A stretch of 64,000 bases of DNA from Octopus bimaculoides (Eukaryota), in assembly GCF_001194135.2 (NCBI RefSeq), contig NC_068990.1, positions 66,761,956 to 66,825,955 on the forward strand, written 5' to 3'. This document shows, piece by piece, positions 18,501 to 60,577 of the stretch. The notes beneath the pieces are model-generated. The model made no database searches. It was not told the DNA's origin and was given only the letters and a program-made list of their open reading frames with translations. The position numbers and the translations under genes are program-made. How positions within the stretch are numbered: position 1 is the stretch's first letter; every line of letters begins with the position of its first letter.

Positions 18501-20933
18501 ATTATATTTAGATGAGAAATTTTACATCAATAGATCTACAAAAATTTCACTTTGTACTGAAATAATTTTGAGGTTTAGCAATGAACCATATATGGCGTTG
18601 TATGCAGCTTCACCCGTTTGTAGTCAAGTCTATACAACTTCAAAATTATATGCATACCTATATACATCATGCATTCATATACATGTATGTTTACACACAC
18701 ACTCATATGTATGCATGCATGTATGTATGTATGTATGTATGTATATATGTATGTATGTATGTATGTGTGAATATAAGTTCGCGTGTGCGTCTTTGTGATC
18801 AAGTTGGTATGTCACTGCTTAACTGCACGTGTTTCTATATAGCCTTTACTGAATGGTTCGGCAGGAGGAAAGTGATGCGGTCGATTTGATCGTCTACACC
18901 CAGCAAGAGTCTTCCCAAACATGTTTACAAAGTATATATGTATGTATGTATGCATGTATGTATGTATGTATGTATGTATGAATGTATGTATGTAAGTCAC
19001 CATGAGAAATACACGTCAGCCTATTCTATCGTAATATAAAGTATTACAAAAGCCTTAGAGTGACTTTATTAAATTAGAAGAGGTACACCAAGGGGAGACG
19101 AAAGATGCTAAATCGGCTTTTCATAGATCTTTTTGTATTCTAGTAAAATTATTCAAAAATATCTTATTACATTCAAATGAATTCGAAATACGCTATTATA
19201 TACTTCAACGTACATTATTACATACAGGTTTTGTTCCTCATACATACATACATACATGTACGCATGCATACATACATACATGCATGCATATTTTCCTAAC
19301 ACAAGTCAGAAGAGAAAAAATATGCTCTGTTGTGAAAATCAACTGCCCTTTGAACTCCAGTATGGTCAGAAAAATAGAGAAGAAAGATAACATCTATGAG
19401 TCATTGATAAGGAGTTTGCATTTCCAGTACCCAAGACATACTTTCAGTTTTATTATTATTATTATTATTGGACCAACAGAACACGTACCAATCTGCCTGG
19501 AGCAAAATATGATTGAACTTAGGTTGCCAAATACGAATGCAACAACTTAATTCATACACTACAAGTGATCACAATATCTGGGTCAATAAACATGTACAAG
19601 ACCTTTTTAAAATGTAAAGTGTGATGAACTAAACCACATGCTTTCCATCATGACTTTGCTACCAAGTAGCCAAGTAGGTGGCCGGCAGAGTTTAATTCGA
19701 AATTACGAGAAAAAGAAAACATACTTGCACACACACGCACACGTGCGCGCGCGTGCGTACACACACACAAATGTATCGATGTGCTCGTGTGCATGTGTGT
19801 GTGTATGTATGTATGTTCATATACGTTTATTGTCACAAAACTGAAAGCTTAAAAGCAAAACAACGTATTTTGAACGATTTTTCGCGAGAATCTGAAAATC
19901 GGGCTTCAAAATATTTATCTTCTTTTAAAAGGAATATATTCGAGAAGCTTGCTATATCATGCATTTTCATAATGCTATGATAGAATAACAAATTTAGAAA
20001 AAAAGACAGGTGTTTAAAACAGAGAAACGTAGCTTTTATACTCCTTTTATTATGCTACGGCAGTATAACTATTTTATGGAAAATAAGAGAAAAAGAGGTC
20101 TTAAAAGCATTCATTTATAGCTTAGTTTTAAAGCGCAGCTTATTTCAAAACCAGATTTACGGTTCTTTTTCTTTCTTTTTTATGTTACATCAAACTACTA
20201 AAAGGCAACCAAAATATGGGGAGAATATTTATTGACAAAAAATATTAACAAAAGGGCATTGTAAGGATCGGACGCCGAAGATATAAGCGCAAAGTTAAAT
20301 AGTTAATTTATCGAATAGTTTGTTCTTTAAATCCTCTCCTTATTAAATATTCTCTTTCTTTTTCCTCTCAATAAAAATATAAAAATACGAAACGACTGAT
20401 TTTTGATCCTCTCCTGCTCTTATCTCCCTTCGCCTTCACTCTTTAGCTTCAATATAGTGACATAACATTCAGTCTTCCAGGCATTTGATTTGTTTGTGTT
20501 GGTATTTAATAAAAAAAGAAAAGTTTTAACAGAGAAGGAATTTAAACAACGGAATAATTCCATAAATAAACTATTGCAGTTTGTCGTGTATGTCTTCCAT
20601 ACAACGATCCTACAATTCACTTTCATCACTATCATCATCATCGTCACCGTCGTCGTCGTTGTCGTCAACATCATCATCATCATCATCGGCGAGCGAATAT
20701 CGGCAAAGTTTATCTCGGCGGAATTTAAACTCAGAGCATAAAGACAGACAAAATGCCGCTAAGTATTTTGCTCGATTTGCTAACAATTCTGCCATCATGC
20801 CGCCTTGGAAAAAATATGAAACGCTTCATGCGAATCATTCTTGTGCAAGGACCATGCTATTCATCTCTGTATCGTTCCACTTTTAGAATATGTACTGCCG
20901 AAACTAGTTTAGATTATTATTAATATTACTATA

Positions 20934-26849: not shown

Positions 26850-27608
26850 GGGTGTGGACACTCATGTATGGATGAAGAGCTCAGGATTGAAGGCTGAAAC
26901 CGAAGGTTTTATCATAGCAGCACAAGATCAAAGTTTGGCAACCAGGGCTTACCACTACAAAATAATGAACGGTGGCACTGGATGAAACAGTTGACCACAT
27001 CTTAACTGGATGCACAGCGCTTGCAAAAACCGAATATATTCATAGACACAATAGAGTAGCGCAATATATCCATTGGAAGATATGTAAACACTACCAACTT
27101 CCAACTTCAGAAAGATGGTACCAGCATAAACCTGAAACTGTCACCAGAAAAGATGATTTAACAGAACTCTGGGACATGCCAATCAATACTGATAAAGAAA
27201 TCAAGGCAAACACGCCGGACATAATCATCAAAGATGGGAAGAATAAGAAATGCTTAATAATAGATGTGACAGTACCATCAGTGAGAAATGTGTTCATTAA
27301 AGAAGTTGAGAAGTTATTTAAGTACAAAGACCTAGAAATAGAAGTGACTAAGACGTGGGGAATGAAAAGCAGCACAGCACCAGTGGTGATTGGAGAGTTA
27401 ATGCTAATTAAAAAGAGTCTTGATAAGCAGCTCAACAATCTCCCTTGTAGTGTTACCGTGGGAGAACTTTAAAAAATAGTGTTGCTAGGTTCCGCACACA
27501 TTTTACGCCGTGTACTCTCCATCAGATGAGGACCTGCTGTGACCCTAGGGACAAGAGACGACCTCGGTTCTGCAGAAGATAACGGATCATATTTTATTTT
27601 AAAATGGT
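26850..27608 (+). mobile_element. 5'-truncated R4/Dong-type non-LTR retrotransposon 3' end (CCHC remnant plus restriction-like endonuclease)
   Basis: WMKSSGLKAETEGFIIAAQDQSLATR, DETVDHILTGCTALAKTEYIHRHNRVAQYIHW, NTPDIIIKD..CLIIDVTVP..KEVEKLFKYKDLEIE (PD-(D/E)xK), EL*KIVLLGSAHILRRVL. A short 3' UTR then runs into (TAA)n at 27609. Confidence 0.9.
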
Positions 27609-34643: not shown

Positions 34644-36459
34644 GGTGTACAAATCTACATCGGTTGTCAAGAGCTATCCAACAGACATACACACACATGT
34701 GAATACATATAATATACCTATGTCCGGATGGTTTCCACACACTTATCGTCAACAAAATTGACTCAAAAAGTATTTGTCAACCCGGTATTACAACAAAAAG
34801 AAACGTCTCCGAACTGCTACGCCGTTATACTGAACCCAAAACCATGCGTTTGGCCAGTGAACGTCATGACTATACAAGTTAAAATTATGTCATGAAGCTC
34901 ATTAGCGTATGGCTAGCAGAAACAACCGTAGATGCCTATACATGCATGATTCATGTTGATGTGTATAACTATATATGATTCAATTACATTGATTGAATAA
35001 CTTCATTTATGCGTTCGGGAATTTGGTTGACAGCCTAGGATTTGCGTTTTCATTTTCCTCTCCTATATATATATATATATATATATAAAAACAAAAGTAA
35101 ATGAGTATATGCATATATACGTACAGGTATGTGCATACCGACATCCACCTGTATGTATAGGTGCATATCTGGGTACAGGACATTGCAAACAAACGTAGAC
35201 GAGAACACACGAGCCACATAGAGAACATTCTACTTCATCAGCTACCCACGTTTTAACACCGGCGTTTCGACGAGCTTCGGGCAGGACGCAACGTTAAAAC
35301 GGCTCGTCCCATGGATCGCAGATTAAATCTGTATACGCAAATTAAATCTAGCCATGGAGGAATGTAGTGGCGGANNNNNNNNNNNNNNNNNNNNNNNNNN
35401 NNNNNNNNNNNNNNNNNNNNNNNNNNNNNNNNNNNNNNNNNNNNNNNNNNNNNNNNNNNNNNNNNNNNNNNNNNNNNNNNNNNNNNNNNNNNNNNNNNNN
35501 NNNNNNNNNNNNNNNNNNNNNNNNNNNNNNNNNNNNNNNNNNNNNNNNNNNNNNNNNNNNNNNNNNNNNNNNNNNNNNNNNNNNNNNNNNNNNNNNNNNN
35601 NNNNNNNNNNNNNNNNNNNNNNNNNNNNNNNNNNNNNNNNNNNNNNNNNNNNNNNNNNNNNNNNNNNNNNNNNNNNNNNNNNNNNNNNNNNNNNNNNNNN
35701 NNNNNNNNNNNNNNNNNNNNNNNNNNNNNNNNNNNNNNNNNNNNNNNNNNNNNNNNNNNNNNNNNNNNNNNNNNNNNNNNNNNNNNNNNNNNNNNNNNNN
35801 NNNNNNNNNNNNNNNNNNNNNNNNNNNNNNNNNNNNNNNNNNNNNNNNNNNNNNNNNNNNNNNNNNNNNNNNNNNNNNNNNNNNNNNNNNNNNNNNNNNN
35901 NNNNNNNNNNNNNNNNNNNNNNNNNNNNNNNNNNNNNNNNNNNNNNNNNNNNNNNNNNNNNNNNNNNNNNNNNNNNNNNNNNNNNNNNNNNNNNNNNNNN
36001 NNNNNNNNNNNNNNNNNNNNNNNNNNNNNNNNNNNNNNNNNNNNNNNNNNNNNNNNNNNNNNNNNNNNNNNNNNNNNNNNNNNNNNNNNNNNNNNNNNNN
36101 NNNNNNNNNNNNNNNNNNNNNNNNNNNNNNNNNNNNNNNNNNNNNNNNNNNNNNNNNNNNNNNNNNNNNNNNNNNNNNNNNNNNNNNNNNNNNNNNNNNN
36201 NNNNNNNNNNNNTATGTATGTATGTATGTATGTATGTATGTATGTATGTATATATAGTGATGGCTGATAGTCAACTTAATGTGGGAATCCCAGGAAAGGG
36301 ATGAATGCTACTGCTATTTAGCCCCAAGAAACACCGTTTCTAGTTGACTACGCGACACAAACGTTCTGTGTCTTTAAGTTTTCAAACAGAGGAGATAAGC
36401 ACCTCCACCCAACAAAGCCAGCTGTAAATTTTAATTCCTTTTTTTTTTTGCATTAAACC

Positions 36460-52076: not shown

Positions 52077-53109
52077 NNNNNNNNNNNNNNNNNNNNNNNN
52101 NNNNNNNNNNNNNNNNNNNNNNNNNNNNNNNNNNNNNNNNNNNNNNNNNNNNNNNNNNNNNNNNNNNNNNNNNNNNNNNNNNNNNNNNNNNNNNNNNNNN
52201 NNNNNNNNNNNNNNNNNNNNNNNNNNNNNNNNNNNNNNNNNNNNNNNNNNNNNNNNNNNNNNNNNNNNNNNNNNNNNNNNNNNNNNNNNNNNNNNNNNNN
52301 NNNNNNNNNNNNNNNNNNNNNNNNNNNNNNNNNNNNNNNNNNNNNNNNNNNNNNNNNNNNNNNNNNNNNNNNNNNNNNNNNNNNNNNNNNNNNNNNNNNN
52401 NNNNNNNNNNNNNNNNNNNNNNNNNNNNNNNNNNNNNNNNNNNNNNNNNNNNNNNNNNNNNNNNNNNNNNNNNNNNNNNNNNNNNNNNNNNNNNNNNNNN
52501 NNNNNNNNNNNNNNNNNNNNNNNNNNNNNNNNNNNNNNNNNNNNNNNNNNNNNNNNNNNNNNNNNNNNNNNNNNNNNNNNNNNNNNNNNNNNNNNNNNNN
52601 NNNNNNNNNNNNNNNNNNNNNNNNNNNNNNNNNNNNNNNNNNNNNNNNNNNNNNNNNNNNNNNNNNNNNNNNNNNNNNNNNNNNNNNNNNNNNNNNNNNN
52701 NNNNNNNNNNNNNNNNNNNNNNNNNNNNNNNNNNNNNNNNNNNNNNNNNNNNNNNNNNNNNNNNNNNNNNNNNNNNNNNNNNNNNNNNNNNNNNNNNNNN
52801 NNNNNNNNNNNNNNNNNNNNNNNNNNNNNNNNNNNNNNNNNNNNNNNNNNNNNNNNNNNNNNNNNNNNNNNNNNNNNNNNNNNNNNNNNNNNNNNNNNNN
52901 NNNNNNNNNNNNNNNNNNNNNNNNNNNNNNATATATATATTTAATACGACGGACTTCTCCCAGTTTCCGTCTACCAAATTCTTCACAAGGCTTTGGTCGG
53001 CCCGAGGCTATGGTAGAAGACACTTGGCCAAGGTGCCACGCAGTCAGACAGAAACCGAAACCGCGTGGTTGGGAGGCAAGCGTCTTACCACACTGCCAAG
53101 CTTGTAGTC

Positions 53110-54761: not shown

Positions 54762-57349
54762 TATATGTATGTATGTATGTACGTATGTATGTATGAATGT
54801 ATGTATGTATGCTTGCATGCATGCATGTATATAAATCATCATCAATTAAAAGTGACGAAGAGAGCAGGGAGCACCAGCTTTGCTAGAGATAAGTTTCAAA
54901 GAACTCCTTAGCCACAGAAGGACATTTTCTACTTATTGACAGGGGAGACACCTCCCCACCGCAACAAGTGGTATTATATTAGCATGCCAGTCTCGCATGG
55001 AATCTAATCCTTACTTTAATACGTGTGGTGAAGCTGAATTCTGCCCTGCTAGTATATATAGACTACACCATAGGAATTTGGTGTAAGCATTAATGATGAG
55101 CATTAAATTCCATGCGAAAATGGCATGGCAATCGAATGTCTTCCCTGCCATAGGCTCATACAGCCGGTTTCCCAGATCTTGTGACACTTGTACCCCGCAC
55201 CCTTGGGCGGGACGCTGGTTCATCGTAAGGTTGCTCATGTTTGCCAGCCAGCTGGTACCGTTACTGGGATTGCCGTTAAACGGAATGTTTTGTTCAAAAA
55301 CACAACGCATCACCTGGTCCAGGAACCGAAGCTACAATCATGGGAATAAAACATTAACCCTTAACTCACGCCTTCCCCCCCCACACATACATACATATAC
55401 ACACAGAAAAGCACACCGTTTGACAACCAGTGTTAGTTTGTTTACATCCTTTAAAGACTAAGTACCACTTTTAACAAGGAAAATAGTACTGCAATCATTT
55501 GTTCATTTGTTCGACTGAAACCCTTTGAGGTGGTACCCCAGCATGACCGCAAAAGTAAAAGTTATACATACATTTATATGTGTGTGTATGTACATACACA
55601 CACGTTTTTAGTTTATTTTCTCGTTTATATCACCCAAACTAAACACACACGCGCGCACTCCCTCCCNNNNNNNNNNNNNNNNNNNNNNNNNNNNNNNNNN
55701 NNNNNNNNNNNNNNNTCACTCACTCACTCACTCTTTCTACCACCTGTCTGTTTCTTTCTCTGCCTTATAAATTTCTATCTCTAAATCTTTTGCTTTTTCT
55801 ATTTTATATTCTCTGTATGATCCACGCTTCTTAAATGGGTGAGTAGCTATTGATGCTGCAATTAATGAAAAGATGTACCGTTTTTAATGGTAAAATAAGA
55901 TGTTATCTTCTTTCGTTTCAACACACGTTCACACTAATGTAAATAATCGTAAACTAACAGCACTACTTTGTCGCTGTGCCATAATTAACCACTTATACAA
56001 CTGCCTCCATCAACCCCATTCACATCACTAAAATCACTGCTAAAAGCATACCATTAGCTCAATGGCCAACGAAGCAGCTTCTATGTGACTGGTCGATCTG
56101 CTGGAATTAGTTAGCTACCAAATGTTCTTGAAATCACACCATGTTTTTGATCCTATGTCTTCTCGACCAGTGGTGACCTCAGCCCAAACAACAAAACCAC
56201 TGATGTAAAACTACTGCTTCTTTATACACCAGAATCTCAAAATTAACCAACTCTGCCATAATTCCAGTGATAATTCTTTCTAATTTTGACACAAGATCAG
56301 CAGTTATGATGGGAGAGGAGATCAATTTCATTGACATCAAATCTAATCTGGTACTAACTCTGCGTCTAACCTGAAAACATGAAAAAGTCGAGTATTTGAA
56401 CTCAGAACATAAAGAGCCAAAACGCATACCACAAAGCGTTTTGTCGTACTTATGGTTCTGTCACCTCAATGTCTTTCTTTCTCCCAGTAAAAATTCTTTC
56501 TAAATTTTGGCCCAAGACCAGTAGTTTTCAGGGGAGGGTTAAATCAATTATATCAACCGTCATACTTTCTCTCAGTAATAATAATAATACCATTACTACC
56601 ATTCAAACTCAATCAAAGCAATACGGTAAGTATTTCTAGTACGTTTAATCCATCCCACCACCACCAGCACCACCATCATTACCTCCACCAATGTCCTAAC
56701 TCTCTTCTCGTTCTCATCTATCAACCCCCAATTATTTGAAACAACTTTTACCTATTACGACTCCCCACGATAGCTGTTATGATAACCGTCATTACACCGA
56801 AACCAACACTATTATTAATCGAACTAAAGCTACCAATATCTCTATCACTGTCCCCCGTTTCTCCTCCACCTCTACTACCAACACCATAACCGTTACCCTA
56901 ATCTAGACCAATATTACCCTACCACTACAACGTCATTTTCAACACCACCTCAAACCCACCAACCGGTAAGGTATCCACCATTATCGTATTTATTGCATCT
57001 CATTTTCTCGACGCCATCTTTAAGTACATTTTCGTTTTAAAGTGTTTCACGGGAGGATCTATTCATAGTCTAATAATTAAAAAGCTTTTATATATTTATT
57101 TGAATATTTTTACAAAATGACTATTTTTCTTTTCGAGGTGTCTGGTAAAAGATTTGAAAATTATTTCTGCACTATTTTTACTTTGATTTTACATAGACCT
57201 TACACACACACACACATACACACATACATACACGCACACACACACACGCGGGCACGCACACGCACACACACACACGCACACACACACACGGTGTGTTTAC
57301 AAGAACTACTGAATAAATACTAGTGTAAGAAATAAAGAAAGAAGAGGAG

Positions 57350-57630
57350 GAGATGATAATGATGATGACGACGACGACGACGATGATGGTGATGATGGTG
57401 ATGACGACGACGACGACGATGACGATGATGATGATCATGAGGATGGTGATGATGACGACGATGATGTGGCAAGTGGTGAAGATGATTGATTTTGTTGGGG
57501 GTTGTGAGATGGTTACGATGATAGTGCTGATGATAATGATGTTGATGATTGTACTGTTGTTTGTGGTGGTGGTGGTGGTGGTGGTAGTAATGGTGGGATC
57601 ATGAAGATGGTAATGATGGTGTTAGTGATG
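57350..57630. repeat. Degenerate (GAT)/(GAC)/(GGT) trinucleotide tract
   Basis: Read directly. Confidence 0.9.
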
Positions 57631-57731
57631 ATGTTTTTTTTGTTTTTTCTTTGTTTTTTTACGAGCACAAGTATGAGAATATTAACGAATCATTATATCA
57701 TCGATCAATACGTTCGTATTTTTATTTCATA

Positions 57732-57749
57732 CTGACTTTTTTTTTTCAG
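57732..57749 (+). promoter_or_regulatory. 3' splice site: branch point CTGAC, poly-T tract and CAG
   Basis: ACTGACTTTTTTTTTTCAG|G directly precedes the long open frame. Confidence 0.75.
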
Positions 57750-59937
57750 GTCCTTCCATGATGTGCTACATAAACTGATCACCTATCATACTTGGACATT
57801 GAACAAACATCATCACGGTACATACCGCTTTCATGACAATGTCCTCCTTATATTCCTGATAATATCTTTGATTATGTTAATTAATTATTTGATGAATCTG
57901 TTGGTACCATTGGAGAAAACCGAAGGAAAAGCATTTACTAATTTAGGTCACAAACTTCCCGCGTATATCTTTGTCGATTTCCTGGTATTTTTCATCCCTC
58001 TTATATTTGAGCATCTCCTTAGAAATATAAATGTGAAAGATGCAATTCTGAAAAATAAAGGTCAGCGTTTTCCACATCAACTTCCACTTGAGGAATATGA
58101 ACATTTTTGTGTAGATGATAAATTTGCCGAATATCTACATCTGATTTTTTGTAACCTAGGAATCCATCGATGTGATAGTAAATATGATACAAGCAGTGAG
58201 GTGGATATTGATGACGTATACATGGAACACATGAAAGAATTTGTTAGGAAGGAAGACATGACTGAAAGTTTGATATCTCATTGGTGGCCTGACCTTGAAC
58301 AGTATAATGGATGCTGTCTGTGTACATTTAATGAACATTTAGACAAAGCAGAAAAGCGCAACTGTTTTGTTTTCAGAGATGAAATAGCTCCCATTGTTAA
58401 TTTAAATGAATATGCGTTTTCCATTTTGATTTTACGTTGTTGTTGTTGTTTGAGGAGTTTAAATGGTAACTACAACGAATTCCCGTCTCTCTCAACTGAC
58501 ACATACAGAGATAAAATAATTAAGAAATTCGTTAATTCTTTATTTCTTCTGTTGCATTTGTGCCGAGAGTTTTATCTGAATTATTCGAAAACAATCAATT
58601 TATCAAGTGTTTACAACACCTACAAGGCCGTCGTGTATGAAATACTTCATTATTATATACATTGCATTCTCCGGTCCAAAAGCAGTCAAGAAAGTAGTGA
58701 ACTTCGTATTGATGAAGTAATAATAATAAACGATGCGAACTCCGTCCAAAAAGATATTTTTCCGGCCAAGCGTAAATTCATTAACATGGTAAATTCATTA
58801 ACATGGTTTTGCAATCGACAGTTTCATGGATCAACACGACATCCCAGTGATTTAAAAGAAACTTCAGAAATCAGTGAATTACCAAACCAATATCTTCCTT
58901 TGTTTAATCATTTAGACAAGGCGTTGGAAATAATAATCGATGCAGTAATTTATGTCGTTTACCAACAGAAATACGCCAGCGAAAATGAAAAATTGAATGC
59001 TAGCATGCTGCAGGAAATATTTTCTTATGCTTCCGATATTCTAGAGACTTGTGTTTATATTGAAAATTCAAGCGAAGAATTGATCAATAAAATAGACACC
59101 AATATATCCCAGCACAAATTTCTGTATATATATACCATTGTACAAGGTGATGACTCACAAAACCCCAACTTTCACGAGCTGCAGTTATATTTCCAGAGGA
59201 GCGTACACGACTACGAAGTTCTGATCAAAAATGCTATTGATACTGTCGAGAATAACATTATCGATTCATTTTTCTCAGAGGCGTTGTTACCTTATTTACA
59301 AGAACAATTCCCAAACGAGAATGTAGAATTTCCAGCAGAAACAGAAATTAAAATGTTATGCAAAAAAGTTATAGCAGAATCTGAAGAGGAAGTCAACAAA
59401 GAAAATATAATCCCGATGTTTATTTTTGCCCGCCTCACTCTATTCTGGGGAATTGCTGTTTATGTTCAAGACAACGAATATGTGTTTAGTGGTAAATTAA
59501 CAGGACAAAGATTATTAAGTAATATACTTTCTGTTGTTAAGACTAACAGTCATCTTTATTATCCACTGAAAATTTGTTTACTTGAAGCTGGAATATGTGA
59601 ATATTGCAGCGAAAAATCCGAATTAAATCACCAATGGTACGCTTATTATATGAAGCTTTTTTCAAGACCATTTTTGAAATGGAGGATAATCTTTAATTTT
59701 TTATTCGAATTGGAAAACAAATTAAAAGCCGCTGTATTTCATTGTGTAGAAAACATCATGACTCATACATTTGAAATGCAGTCACCGCATGTCTCTATAT
59801 ATTATGCATCAGTTGTCATTGACCAGCAGTCATGTGTGGTGGTCAACTTTGTCAAGAGTTTTGTAGCAGATCGGCTCGGTTACCTCGACACGAATCCGTC
59901 AACACCTACTTTCGCAGAGAATCAATACAAAGAACAG
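57750..59937 (+). CDS. Large internal coding exon (~729 aa) of an uncharacterised, probably helical protein with two N-terminal hydrophobic segments
   Basis: 2.2 kb of stop-free, complex sequence in AT-rich DNA. Canonical acceptor at 57749/57750 (phase 2) and donor CAG|GTCAGT at 59937/59938 (phase 0). Beyond the donor the ORF turns into (GT)n-derived CVCV text. No transposon or other family motif recognised. Confidence 0.8.
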
Positions 59938-60577
59938 GTCAGTAATTGTGAAAGATATGTGTGTGCGTGTGTGTGTGCTCGTGTGTGCGTTCGTAGGTGT
60001 GTGTATGTATATATATATCAGAAGCAACAGAGTGACTCAAGGGCCACCACATTACTTAAGTTTCTGTGGGCGTAAAATGCGTCTTCAACATACGGACGCG
60101 TTCTCCAAACATCTCCATGAGGTAGTCTCCTCTTATGTCCGTGAAGTAATGTATTGTTGAGTCAAACTGTTATTCAGTACATAAAACGTCAACAAAACTT
60201 TCGTTCACTCACTCGTCTCTCGTTGACATATACACACTCACACATGCACGGACGCACGCACGCACGCACGCACACACAGACACACACTCACACACACACA
60301 CAAATGATATTATTTGTTCTCTCAGACTTATGTCATGTGTTTAGGTTACAATGTTTCATTAGACTATTTTGGCTAATGTCGAGAAGAAGAAAAGAATGTT
60401 TTGATGTGAACGATATGAATATTGTCACAACATCAACAAATTTTCTCCCATCAAACTGCAAATAATAATCCTATATCATTCCTTTATAGATTTTGAATCC
60501 TAGCTTTTTCAAACTTCGTAGAAATGGGATATATAACGTTGCCCCGTAGAAATATGTGTGTGTGTATGTATGTGTGT

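What the first reader, a model, noticed from the sequence alone, without database searches (positions are those of the whole stretch)
57750..59937. Intact 2.2-kb orphan exon with no family I can recognise
Seen: 729 uninterrupted codons bounded by a branch point/acceptor and a GTCAGT donor, where every neighbouring TE ORF is broken by stops and frameshifts. I see no RT, transposase, Walker A, zinc-finger array or cadherin motif. Inference: it is under purifying selection. An unusually long exon of unknown family could be a lineage-specific gene, or a domesticated retro/viral-derived ORF later joined to a host promoter.
Basis: partly seen in the sequence, partly recalled or inferred. Interest (0 to 1): 0.7.

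Follow-up and report, generated by a model that had tools for sequence, protein, structure and literature searches.

The report
Big exon, cephalopod-only membrane protein gene
This is a genuine 2.2-kb coding exon of an annotated but uncharacterised octopus gene for a five-pass membrane protein; I found the gene only in octopuses and cuttlefish-like cephalopods, it evolves fast but under selection, and it matches no known protein family.

Summary
Window 57750-59937 (+) is one open exon of 729 codons, with a pyrimidine tract and AG acceptor and a GTCAGT donor. An open frame this long is far beyond chance.

The window is Octopus bimaculoides. The exon is 100% identical to RefSeq 'uncharacterized protein LOC106883815', and the O. 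sinensis orthologue is 86% identical. It is an internal exon, not an orphan one. Upstream exons encode TM1 and a beta-rich domain. A terminal exon encodes TM4, TM5 and the stop. The exon itself encodes TM2, TM3 and a helical loop of about 640 residues, predicted to be cytoplasmic.

The same single exon, with the same phase and splice sites, is intact in cuttlefish (Acanthosepion esculentum reads and two relatives) and in one unidentified lineage, at about 25% identity to octopus. Among cuttlefish, dN/dS is 0.27-0.36, with bootstrap intervals below 1.

HMMER against 1.84 billion representative proteins found only these orthologues. Pfam, NCBIfam and PDB gave nothing. AlphaFold models were too poor (pLDDT 33-39) for fold searches to mean anything.

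There is no sign of retroelement or viral origin. The domain order resembles the TM1-PLAT-TM2..TM5 module of polycystin-1, but no test supported that. Verdict: an ordinary, fast-evolving gene restricted to coleoid cephalopods, function unknown, moderate-to-low interest.

The parts
57730..57736 (+). Branch-point-like TACTGAC, 13 nt upstream of the acceptor AG
   Evidence: Read directly from the sequence. That it functions as a branch point is inference.
57737..57749 (+). Polypyrimidine tract (T-run) and CAG acceptor
   Evidence: The orthologous exons in L001, L002, L016 and L017 have the equivalent acceptor tttttcag|N in the same phase.
57750..59937 (+). Internal coding exon of LOC106883815 (2188 nt). 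Its first base completes a codon begun in the upstream exon. It then has 729 codons, which are residues 257-985 of XP_052826930.1.
   Evidence: 100% match to P0001/P0003. The frame is open.
57751..57840 (+). Juxtamembrane segment before TM2, with a high share of invariant residues (Y12, H13, W15, K19, H21, G23, H28, D29, N30 in exon numbering)
   Evidence: Four-sequence alignment A4. 33% of these residues are invariant, against 16% for the whole exon.
57841..57906 (+). TM2 (VLLIFLIISLIMLINYLMNLLV)
   Evidence: Hydropathy peak of 2.47. The segment is also hydrophobic in L001 and L002.
57955..58020 (+). TM3 (LPAYIFVDFLVFFIPLIFEHLL)
   Evidence: Hydropathy peak of 2.0-2.1. A basic flank follows it.
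58021..59937 (+). Loop of about 640 residues between TM3 and TM4, predicted helical and predicted cytoplasmic. Invariant His/Cys at exon residues H130, H139, C141, C188, C191, C233, H300, H304 and C434.
   Evidence: Alignment A4. The secondary structure comes from the low-confidence AF2 model. Flank charges are and residue positions.
59938..59943 (+). Splice donor GTCAGT. The exon ends on a codon boundary.
   Evidence: The orthologues have AAAGAG|GTRAGT at the aligned position.
60490..60549 (+). Short alternative terminal coding exon (ILNPSFFKLRRNGIYNVAP plus stop) used by the newer RefSeq model XP_052826930.1. Its acceptor is ...cctttatag| at 60489.
   Evidence: tblastn match at 100% identity and the sequence itself.

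Best explanation
The region is the main internal coding exon of a single-copy gene, LOC106883815 in Octopus bimaculoides, that so far appears restricted to coleoid cephalopods. The gene encodes a protein of about 1000-1090 residues with five membrane-spanning helices. Upstream exons lie outside the window and encode a short acidic N-tail, TM1 and a beta-rich domain of about 150 residues. This exon encodes a conserved juxtamembrane motif, TM2, TM3 and nearly all of a helical loop of about 640 residues. A distant terminal exon encodes TM4, TM5 and a stop codon a few residues after TM5. These points are shown: exon identity, splice structure, conservation, purifying selection, hydrophobic segments and the absence of any detectable family. 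The following points are inferred. The charge distribution around the helices puts the N-tail outside and both the beta-rich domain and the large loop in the cytoplasm. On that topology the exon would build a membrane-tethered cytoplasmic helical platform. Its most likely role is a protein-interaction or regulatory scaffold. It may be stabilised by a metal site formed by the invariant H139/C141/C188/C191 cluster. The protein evolves fast, at 86% identity between two Octopus species and about 25% between octopus and cuttlefish, but under moderate constraint (omega about 0.3).
For: Identity: 100% match to XP_014790441.1 and XP_052826930.1, and 86% to O. sinensis LOC118764827. Only this exon and a 60-nt alternative last exon lie in the window. 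Chance is excluded. Orthologous single exons are intact, with the same phase and splice sites, in L001, L002, L016 and L017, and align collinearly end to end. L017 comes from run ERR12945500, which the paper bioRxiv 10.1101/2025.04.22.649952 names as Acanthosepion esculentum short reads. dN/dS is 0.36 (0.22-0.60), 0.28 (0.19-0.43) and 0.27 (0.18-0.40) among the cuttlefish sequences, at dS of 0.06-0.11. It is 0.33 between L001 and L002. Exhaustive HMMER against 1.84e9 representative proteins returned only the octopus cluster, P0006, and the two C-terminal exon products P0005 and P0007. Five hydrophobic segments are seen. The terminal exon ends with a stop and a nearby AATAAA just after TM5 in an octopus contig and a cuttlefish-like contig. 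Flank charges (K/R, D/E) are TM1 N-side 1/5 and C-side 4/0, TM3 C-side 3/1, and TM4 N-side 4/2. TM2-TM3 is the most conserved part, at 97.9% between the two octopuses against 84.4% for the loop.
Against: No direct expression data were available here; the RefSeq models are predictions. Both O. bimaculoides models lack the TM4-TM5 exon and end differently, so the five-helix architecture for this species rests on O. sinensis and on contigs from other species. The topology comes from a simple charge count, not a trained predictor. A longer, basic N-tail in one model (P0003) fits an outside N-terminus poorly. The structure models are unusable, with mean pLDDT of 33 and 39, so 'helical' and 'scaffold' are weak statements. 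The metal-site idea rests only on four invariant residues. The terminal exon shows dN/dS of about 1 among close cuttlefish, on very few substitutions. The restriction to cephalopods depends on what the databases hold and on the reach of single-sequence HMMER.
Confidence: 0.8

Rival explanations
1. The gene is a very divergent, truncated relative of the polycystin-1 / receptor-for-egg-jelly (PKD1) family. It would keep only the TM1 - intracellular PLAT domain - TM2..TM5 module. The TM3-TM4 cytoplasmic loop, encoded by this exon, would be greatly expanded. The REJ/GPS ectodomain and the channel-like TM6-TM11 half would be lost.
For: The order of parts is the same: TM1, then a beta-rich domain of about 150 residues, then TM2, TM3, a long loop, TM4 and TM5. 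The charge-based topology puts the beta domain inside the cell, where PLAT always lies in PKD1 proteins (PMC1934368). That paper also records family members with 1, 2 or 6 helices rather than 11. From memory only, the beta domain's pattern of conserved hydrophobic, Gly and Trp positions looks PLAT-like to me.
Against: Pfam, which includes PLAT, GPS, REJ and PKD_channel models, gave no hit at E<=10 for whole proteins or for the isolated domain. phmmer and a profile search against PDB, which holds polycystin-1 chains, gave nothing. HMMER against 1.84e9 proteins reached no PKD1-like protein. The AF2 model of this region has pLDDT of 22-45, and Foldseek gave no hit at E<=0.001. The polycystin-complex chains that do appear have E of 0.4-1.6 and rmsd of about 16 A, which is noise. 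No GPS or REJ precedes TM1, and the protein stops after TM5.
Confidence: 0.25
2. The protein has the opposite membrane orientation. The 640-residue region would be an extracellular or lumenal helical ectodomain, held by disulfides between the conserved cysteines and glycosylated.
For: The loop has invariant cysteines C141, C188, C191, C233 and C434 and five N-x-S/T sequons in the octopus sequence. One gene model (P0003) has a long, very basic N-tail that would prefer the cytoplasm.
Against: The flanks next to TM1, TM3 and TM4 are basic on the side that puts the loop in the cytoplasm. I did not examine whether the sequons are conserved in the other lineages. There is no signal peptide-like start in any model.
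Confidence: 0.15
3. The exon is a domesticated retroelement- or virus-derived ORF captured by a host gene.
For: It is unusually long and uninterrupted, has no recognisable host family, and sits in a repeat-rich region. A reverse-transcriptase ORF lies 3.6 kb downstream of the orthologous exon in L001.
Against: No Pfam domain of any mobile element or virus was found at E<=10. No RT or CCHC motifs were found. No viral or TE protein appeared among the hits in 1.84e9 proteins. The exon begins mid-codon and carries TM2 and TM3 of a polytopic protein. Its splice sites and phase are conserved across lineages that share only about 25% protein identity. The L001 RT has no counterpart in the window.
Confidence: 0.03
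4. The open frame is not a functional coding exon, being either a decaying pseudogene or an annotation artefact.
For: There are no expression data in hand. The O. bimaculoides models disagree at both ends. The terminal exon has dN/dS of about 1 among close cuttlefish.
Against: The chance of a 729-codon open frame is about 2e-23. Frames of 751-757 codons are intact in four further contigs, and omega is significantly below 1.
Confidence: 0.02

Closest known systems
Polycystin-1 / REJ (PKD1) family, membrane-proximal module (TM1 - PLAT - TM2..TM5)
   Same: The order of elements is the same: one helix, a beta-rich domain of roughly PLAT size predicted to be intracellular, two helices, a long predicted cytoplasmic loop, then two helices. 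The family is known to include members with fewer than 11 helices (PMC1934368).
   Different: No sequence or fold test detected PLAT. There is no GPS/REJ ectodomain, TOP domain or channel-like TM6-TM11. The protein ends after TM5. The TM3-TM4 loop is about 640 residues and has no counterpart in any database searched.
Taxonomically restricted ('orphan') genes of coleoid cephalopods
   Same: It was found only in octopus and cuttlefish-like lineages. It has no Pfam domain, is annotated only as 'uncharacterized protein', and evolves fast. From my own knowledge, the octopus genome paper of Albertin et al. 2015 reported many such genes; I did not check that paper here.
   Different: It is large, multi-exon, polytopic and old enough to be shared by lineages with only about 25% identity. 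It is therefore not a young de novo ORF.
Expanded octopus gene families with long single exons (protocadherins, C2H2 zinc-finger genes)
   Same: It is a long uninterrupted coding exon in a repeat-rich octopus region.
   Different: No cadherin or C2H2 motif or Pfam hit was found. The gene is single-copy, with no paralogue found.

Membership tests
Polycystin-1 / REJ (PKD1) family | PLAT/LH2 domain (PF01477) immediately after the first transmembrane helix | tested here: not met
   Pfam gave no hit at E<=10 for P0001-P0004 or for the isolated 153-residue domain. PDB phmmer and profile searches found no PLAT chain. The structural test was inconclusive, because the AF2 model has pLDDT of 22-45 in this domain. 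HMMER's filters hide matches weaker than about E 0.1-0.3, so a very weak similarity is not excluded.
Polycystin-1 / REJ (PKD1) family | GPS/GAIN cleavage domain, and usually a REJ domain, upstream of TM1 | tested here: not met
   Only 39-75 residues precede TM1 in the RefSeq models, and no Pfam hit to GPS or REJ was found.
Polycystin-1 / REJ (PKD1) family | Channel-like last six helices with a TOP domain (PKD_channel / Polycystin_dom) | tested here: not met
   The protein ends a few residues after TM5. The stop is followed by AATAAA in the octopus contig L004 and the cuttlefish-like contig L003. No Pfam hit was found.
Domesticated retroelement / viral gene | A recognisable RT, integrase, gag/capsid, envelope or transposase domain or motif | tested here: not met
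   Pfam found 0 families for the exon and its orthologues above cut-off. The motif scan was negative. One search returned no viral or TE hits.
Domesticated retroelement / viral gene | A self-contained ORF (own start, intronless origin) rather than an integral part of a host reading frame | tested here: not met
   The exon starts with the third base of a codon and has no start of its own. It carries TM2 and TM3 between the exons for TM1 and for TM4-5. The acceptor, donor and phase are conserved in all five lineages or contigs.
Taxonomically restricted (coleoid cephalopod) protein-coding gene | No detectable homologue outside the clade in an exhaustive search | tested here: met
   phmmer of P0002 against 1.84e9 representative proteins gave 4 hits at E<=0.001, all orthologous pieces. 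Three word-indexed searches added only P0013. The limit is that only a single-sequence search could be run exhaustively, not a profile search.
Taxonomically restricted (coleoid cephalopod) protein-coding gene | Orthologues in several species of the clade, under purifying selection | tested here: met
   Orthologues were found in O. bimaculoides, O. sinensis, a further octopus-like source (P0005), Acanthosepion esculentum reads and two close relatives, and the unidentified L001 lineage. Omega is 0.27-0.36.
Octopus expanded families (protocadherin, C2H2 ZNF) | Cadherin repeats or C2H2 finger arrays | tested here: not met

The most novel reading that the evidence does not exclude
The gene founds an undescribed coleoid-specific family. 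In it, a remnant of the polycystin-1 membrane module (TM1, a cryptic PLAT-like domain, TM2-TM5) has lost both the ectodomain and the channel half. It has gained a new 640-residue cytoplasmic His/Cys-bearing helical domain encoded by one giant exon. That would make it a cephalopod-only offshoot of a sensory receptor family.
Probability: 0.2. Interest if true: 0.55.

Novelty: new member of a known kind. Interest (0 to 1): 0.33.

Why it matters
Public annotation already lists the gene as 'uncharacterized', so its existence is not news. Three things are new here. The giant exon is an ancient, spliced, selectively maintained part of a five-pass membrane protein. The protein is shared by octopuses and cuttlefish-like cephalopods. 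It belongs to no family that today's sequence libraries can recognise. Cephalopod-restricted membrane proteins are candidates for the clade's special sensory and neural biology. A solved or confidently predicted structure could show whether this is a truly new fold or a hidden relative of the polycystin receptors. Without expression or structural data it remains one of many lineage-restricted genes of unknown function.

Tried and rejected
1. Pfam on the exon, on four full-length models, on the isolated beta domain, on TM2-3, on the C-terminal exons and on the cuttlefish and L001 orthologues gave nothing above cut-off. The weak hits (Sar8_2, cobW, DUF7476, UPF0122) are far below their cut-offs and not shared between orthologues, so I rejected them.

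2. NCBIfam gave only a 27-residue match of TM2 to a membrane-protein model and one chance match, both below cut-off.

3. PDB sequence searches with phmmer and with a profile gave nothing. The small-conductance mechanosensitive channel hits at E of about 0.1 include the chain's terminal run of His aligned to the query's HHH, and I treated them as artefacts.

4. AlphaFold2 on the full protein (8-row alignment) and on TM1..TM3 (2 rows) gave mean pLDDT of 33 and 39. Foldseek against PDB on both models gave no hit at E<=0.001, so the results are not interpretable. I ran no further search on the viral library, because a negative result from such models says nothing.

5. One word-indexed homology search with alignment A1 returned only the two octopus clusters and was wasted.

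6. I looked for the other exons in the window and in L001. Only the big exon and the 60-nt alternative last exon are present.

7. I tried to name the source organisms through run accessions. ERR3431204, a neighbouring number, is Mytilus coruscus, but I rejected that as a clue because an adjacent accession proves nothing. ERR12945500 is Acanthosepion esculentum, which anchors the cuttlefish assignment. The organism of L001 (ENA ERZ21867824) stays unknown. Non-coding blastn of the loci against the window was uninformative.

8. I looked for published PLAT or PKD1 alignments to use as comparators. The supplement I opened holds only channel-domain alignments, so no targeted profile test was possible.

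9. A literature search for the gene and protein accessions found no paper.

Full report
**1. The observation**

Stop to stop, it spans 57736-60072, which is 779 codons. The part bounded by splice signals is 57750-59937, which is 2188 nt: one base that completes a codon from the previous exon, then 729 codons.

Read directly from the sequence, the signals are:
- TACTGAC at 57730-57736
- a T-run and CAG ending at 57749
- CAG|GTCAGT at 59937/59938

With the window's base composition (about 64% A+T, 6.9% stop probability per codon), 729 open codons have a probability of about 2e-23. The next longest N-free open frame in 64 kb is 209 codons.

Motif scans confirm that the exon has no Walker A, C2H2, CCHC, RT or cadherin signature. 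Pfam finds nothing at E<=10.

None of the 20 longest other open frames carries a Pfam domain above its cut-off, so the claim that neighbouring TE ORFs are broken is not confirmed. Several long 'ORFs' in the listing are only runs of N; the window has 16 gaps totalling 5502 N.

**2. What it is**

The exon peptide is 100% identical to Octopus bimaculoides XP_014790441.1, 'uncharacterized protein LOC106883815'. It is 86% identical to O. sinensis LOC118764827. Newer or longer models are XP_052826930.1 (1004 aa) and XP_036361806.1 (1090 aa). The window is therefore O. bimaculoides, and the exon is already part of an annotated gene.

An exact-word scan shows that only this exon of the older model lies in the window. 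The 19-residue tail of the newer model maps to a short last exon at 60490-60549, behind a good acceptor. The upstream exons are more than 57 kb away or fall in gaps.

The long models give the following architecture:

| Part | Encoded by |
|---|---|
| Short N-tail, TM1, beta-rich stretch of about 150 residues | upstream exons |
| Conserved juxtamembrane segment, TM2, TM3, about 640 further residues | this exon |
| Acidic linker, TM4, TM5 | a further exon, seen in O. sinensis and in Logan contigs |

In an octopus contig (L004) and a cuttlefish-like contig (L003), that last exon has an acceptor. Its stop comes one to nine residues after TM5 and is followed by AATAAA. The protein therefore really ends there and has five helices.

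**3. Relatives elsewhere**

HMMER of the O. sinensis protein against 1.84 billion representative proteins gave four hits:
- the O. bimaculoides cluster
- P0006, 678 aa and 25% identical
- two products of the C-terminal exon, P0005 and P0007

P0006 lies on a 242-kb ENA contig (L001). A word-indexed search with its extended frame added P0013 from a Logan contig (L002).

In L001 and L002 the frame extends upstream of the called start through TM3 and TM2 to an acceptor tttttcag|N. This is in the same phase as in octopus. The frame ends at AAAGAG|GTRAGT, at the position aligned with the octopus donor. The four sequences align collinearly over the whole exon, and 117 of 729 positions are invariant.

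Cluster members of P0013 and P0007 occur in run ERR12945500. A Sepia officinalis genome paper names that run as Acanthosepion esculentum short reads (bioRxiv 10.1101/2025.04.22.649952). The L002/L003/L016/L017 group is therefore cuttlefish. L001 is 56% identical to that group at the protein level, and its organism is unknown.

A neighbouring accession number belongs to a mussel project, but an adjacent number proves nothing, so I did not use it.

**4. Selection**

Octopus against the other lineages is saturated at synonymous sites.

| Comparison | dS | dN/dS (bootstrap 95%) |
|---|---|---|
| Cuttlefish pair 1, 751 codons | 0.06-0.11 | 0.36 (0.22-0.60) |
| Cuttlefish pair 2, 751 codons | 0.06-0.11 | 0.28 (0.19-0.43) |
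| Cuttlefish pair 3, 751 codons | 0.06-0.11 | 0.27 (0.18-0.40) |
| L001 against L002 | 0.94 | 0.33 |

Between the two octopuses, TM2-TM3 is 97.9% identical, the loop 84.4% and the beta domain 90.2%. The exon is therefore under purifying selection of moderate strength, on a fast-evolving protein.

The 140-codon terminal exon shows dN/dS of about 1 among close cuttlefish. This rests on only 1-3 synonymous and 5-11 non-synonymous differences.

**5. Family**

Nothing was found.
- Pfam was run on the exon, on all models, on isolated domains and on orthologues.
- NCBIfam gave nothing above cut-off.
- PDB was searched by phmmer and by profile.
- The literature search returned nothing for the gene or protein accessions.
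- AlphaFold2 on the full protein with all eight available rows gave mean pLDDT of 33. On TM1..TM3 it gave 39, with the beta domain at 22-45.
- Foldseek on both models gave no hit at E<=0.001.

The fold is therefore unknown. Only the secondary-structure picture, a beta-rich domain and an almost entirely helical loop, is worth keeping, and only loosely.

**6. How it probably works**

Counts of K/R and D/E next to the helices are as follows:

| Position | K/R | D/E |
|---|---|---|
| TM1, N-side | 1 | 5 |
| TM1, C-side | 4 | 0 |
| TM3, C-side | 3 | 1 |
| TM4, N-side | 4 | 2 |

By the positive-inside rule, these counts put the N-tail outside and both the beta-rich domain and the 640-residue loop in the cytoplasm.

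My best reading is a membrane-tethered cytoplasmic helical platform that serves protein interaction or regulation. The invariant H139/C141/C188/C191 cluster is a possible structural metal site. All of this is inference. The opposite topology, with an ectodomain held by disulfides, is a live rival.

**7. Comparison with known systems**

The order TM1 - beta domain - TM2 - TM3 - long loop - TM4 - TM5 is the order of the membrane-proximal half of polycystin-1 / REJ proteins. In those proteins a PLAT domain always follows TM1 on the cytoplasmic side, and members with 1, 2, 6 or 11 helices are known (PMC1934368; PMC8846589).

The beta domain also looks PLAT-like to me from memory. Every test I could run failed to support membership:
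- no PLAT, GPS, REJ, TOP or channel domain was detected
- no PDB or database hit to any polycystin was found
- the protein ends after TM5

I therefore do not file it in that family and keep the resemblance as a lead, at about 0.2-0.25.

The retro/viral idea has nothing in its favour beyond the exon's length. There is no mobile-element domain. The exon starts mid-codon and carries two helices of a polytopic protein. Its splice sites are conserved across deep divergence.

**8. Verdict**

This is a real, conserved, selectively maintained internal exon of an annotated but uncharacterised gene for a five-pass membrane protein, so far seen only in coleoid cephalopods.

It is an ordinary example of a cephalopod-restricted gene. 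Its modest extra interest comes from its size, its age and the possible hidden link to polycystins.

Noticed in passing
window 20810-20910 (-): There is a full-length match to U6 spliceosomal RNA (RF00026, 71.5 bits against a gathering score of 44, model positions 1-105 of 105). It ends in a T-run. Just upstream lies what looks to me like an antisense tRNA-like (SINE-type) fragment, although ARAGORN calls no tRNA. It would lie inside the >57-kb intron that precedes the big exon. Whether it is a working U6 gene or a decayed copy was not settled.
   Followed up: partly
window 60490-60549 (+): The newer O. bimaculoides RefSeq model ends in a 19-codon exon 552 nt after the big exon. O. sinensis and contigs from other species instead continue to a distant exon encoding TM4-TM5. 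Either this is a truncated isoform, or the O. bimaculoides models are incomplete.
   Followed up: partly
L003, L008, L011-L015 (terminal exon, 140 codons): Among close cuttlefish sequences the last exon shows dN/dS of about 0.9-1.3 (1-3 synonymous and 5-11 non-synonymous differences). The big exon in the same taxa shows about 0.3. The counts are too small to tell relaxed constraint from noise.
   Followed up: partly
window 57180-57620 (both strands): A trinucleotide repeat tract rich in GAT/GAC/GGT lies just upstream of the acceptor. It gives low-complexity open frames of about 147 codons on both strands, which are not coding.
   Followed up: no
window 59950-60075 (+): A (TG)n-rich stretch directly after the donor keeps the exon's frame open for 45 more codons into the intron. 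This is why ORF finders report 770-779 codons rather than 729.
   Followed up: yes
window, 16 N-runs (for example 35375-36212, 48624-49568, 52077-52930): 8.6% of the window is N. The clusters of 200-370-codon 'ORFs' in several frames at these places are artefacts of translating N.
   Followed up: yes
L001 15593-16375 (-) and 16574-17014 (+): A reverse-transcriptase (RVT_1) ORF lies about 3.6 kb downstream of the orthologous exon in the unidentified lineage. A further ORF beside it looks LINE-like to me. The RVT_1 ORF has no counterpart in the octopus window by tblastn.
   Followed up: partly
window 26969-27469 (+): A 167-codon open frame gives a weak Pfam match to L_protein_N (E 0.0046, 17.4 bits against a cut-off of 27). 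It is below threshold and probably chance.
   Followed up: no
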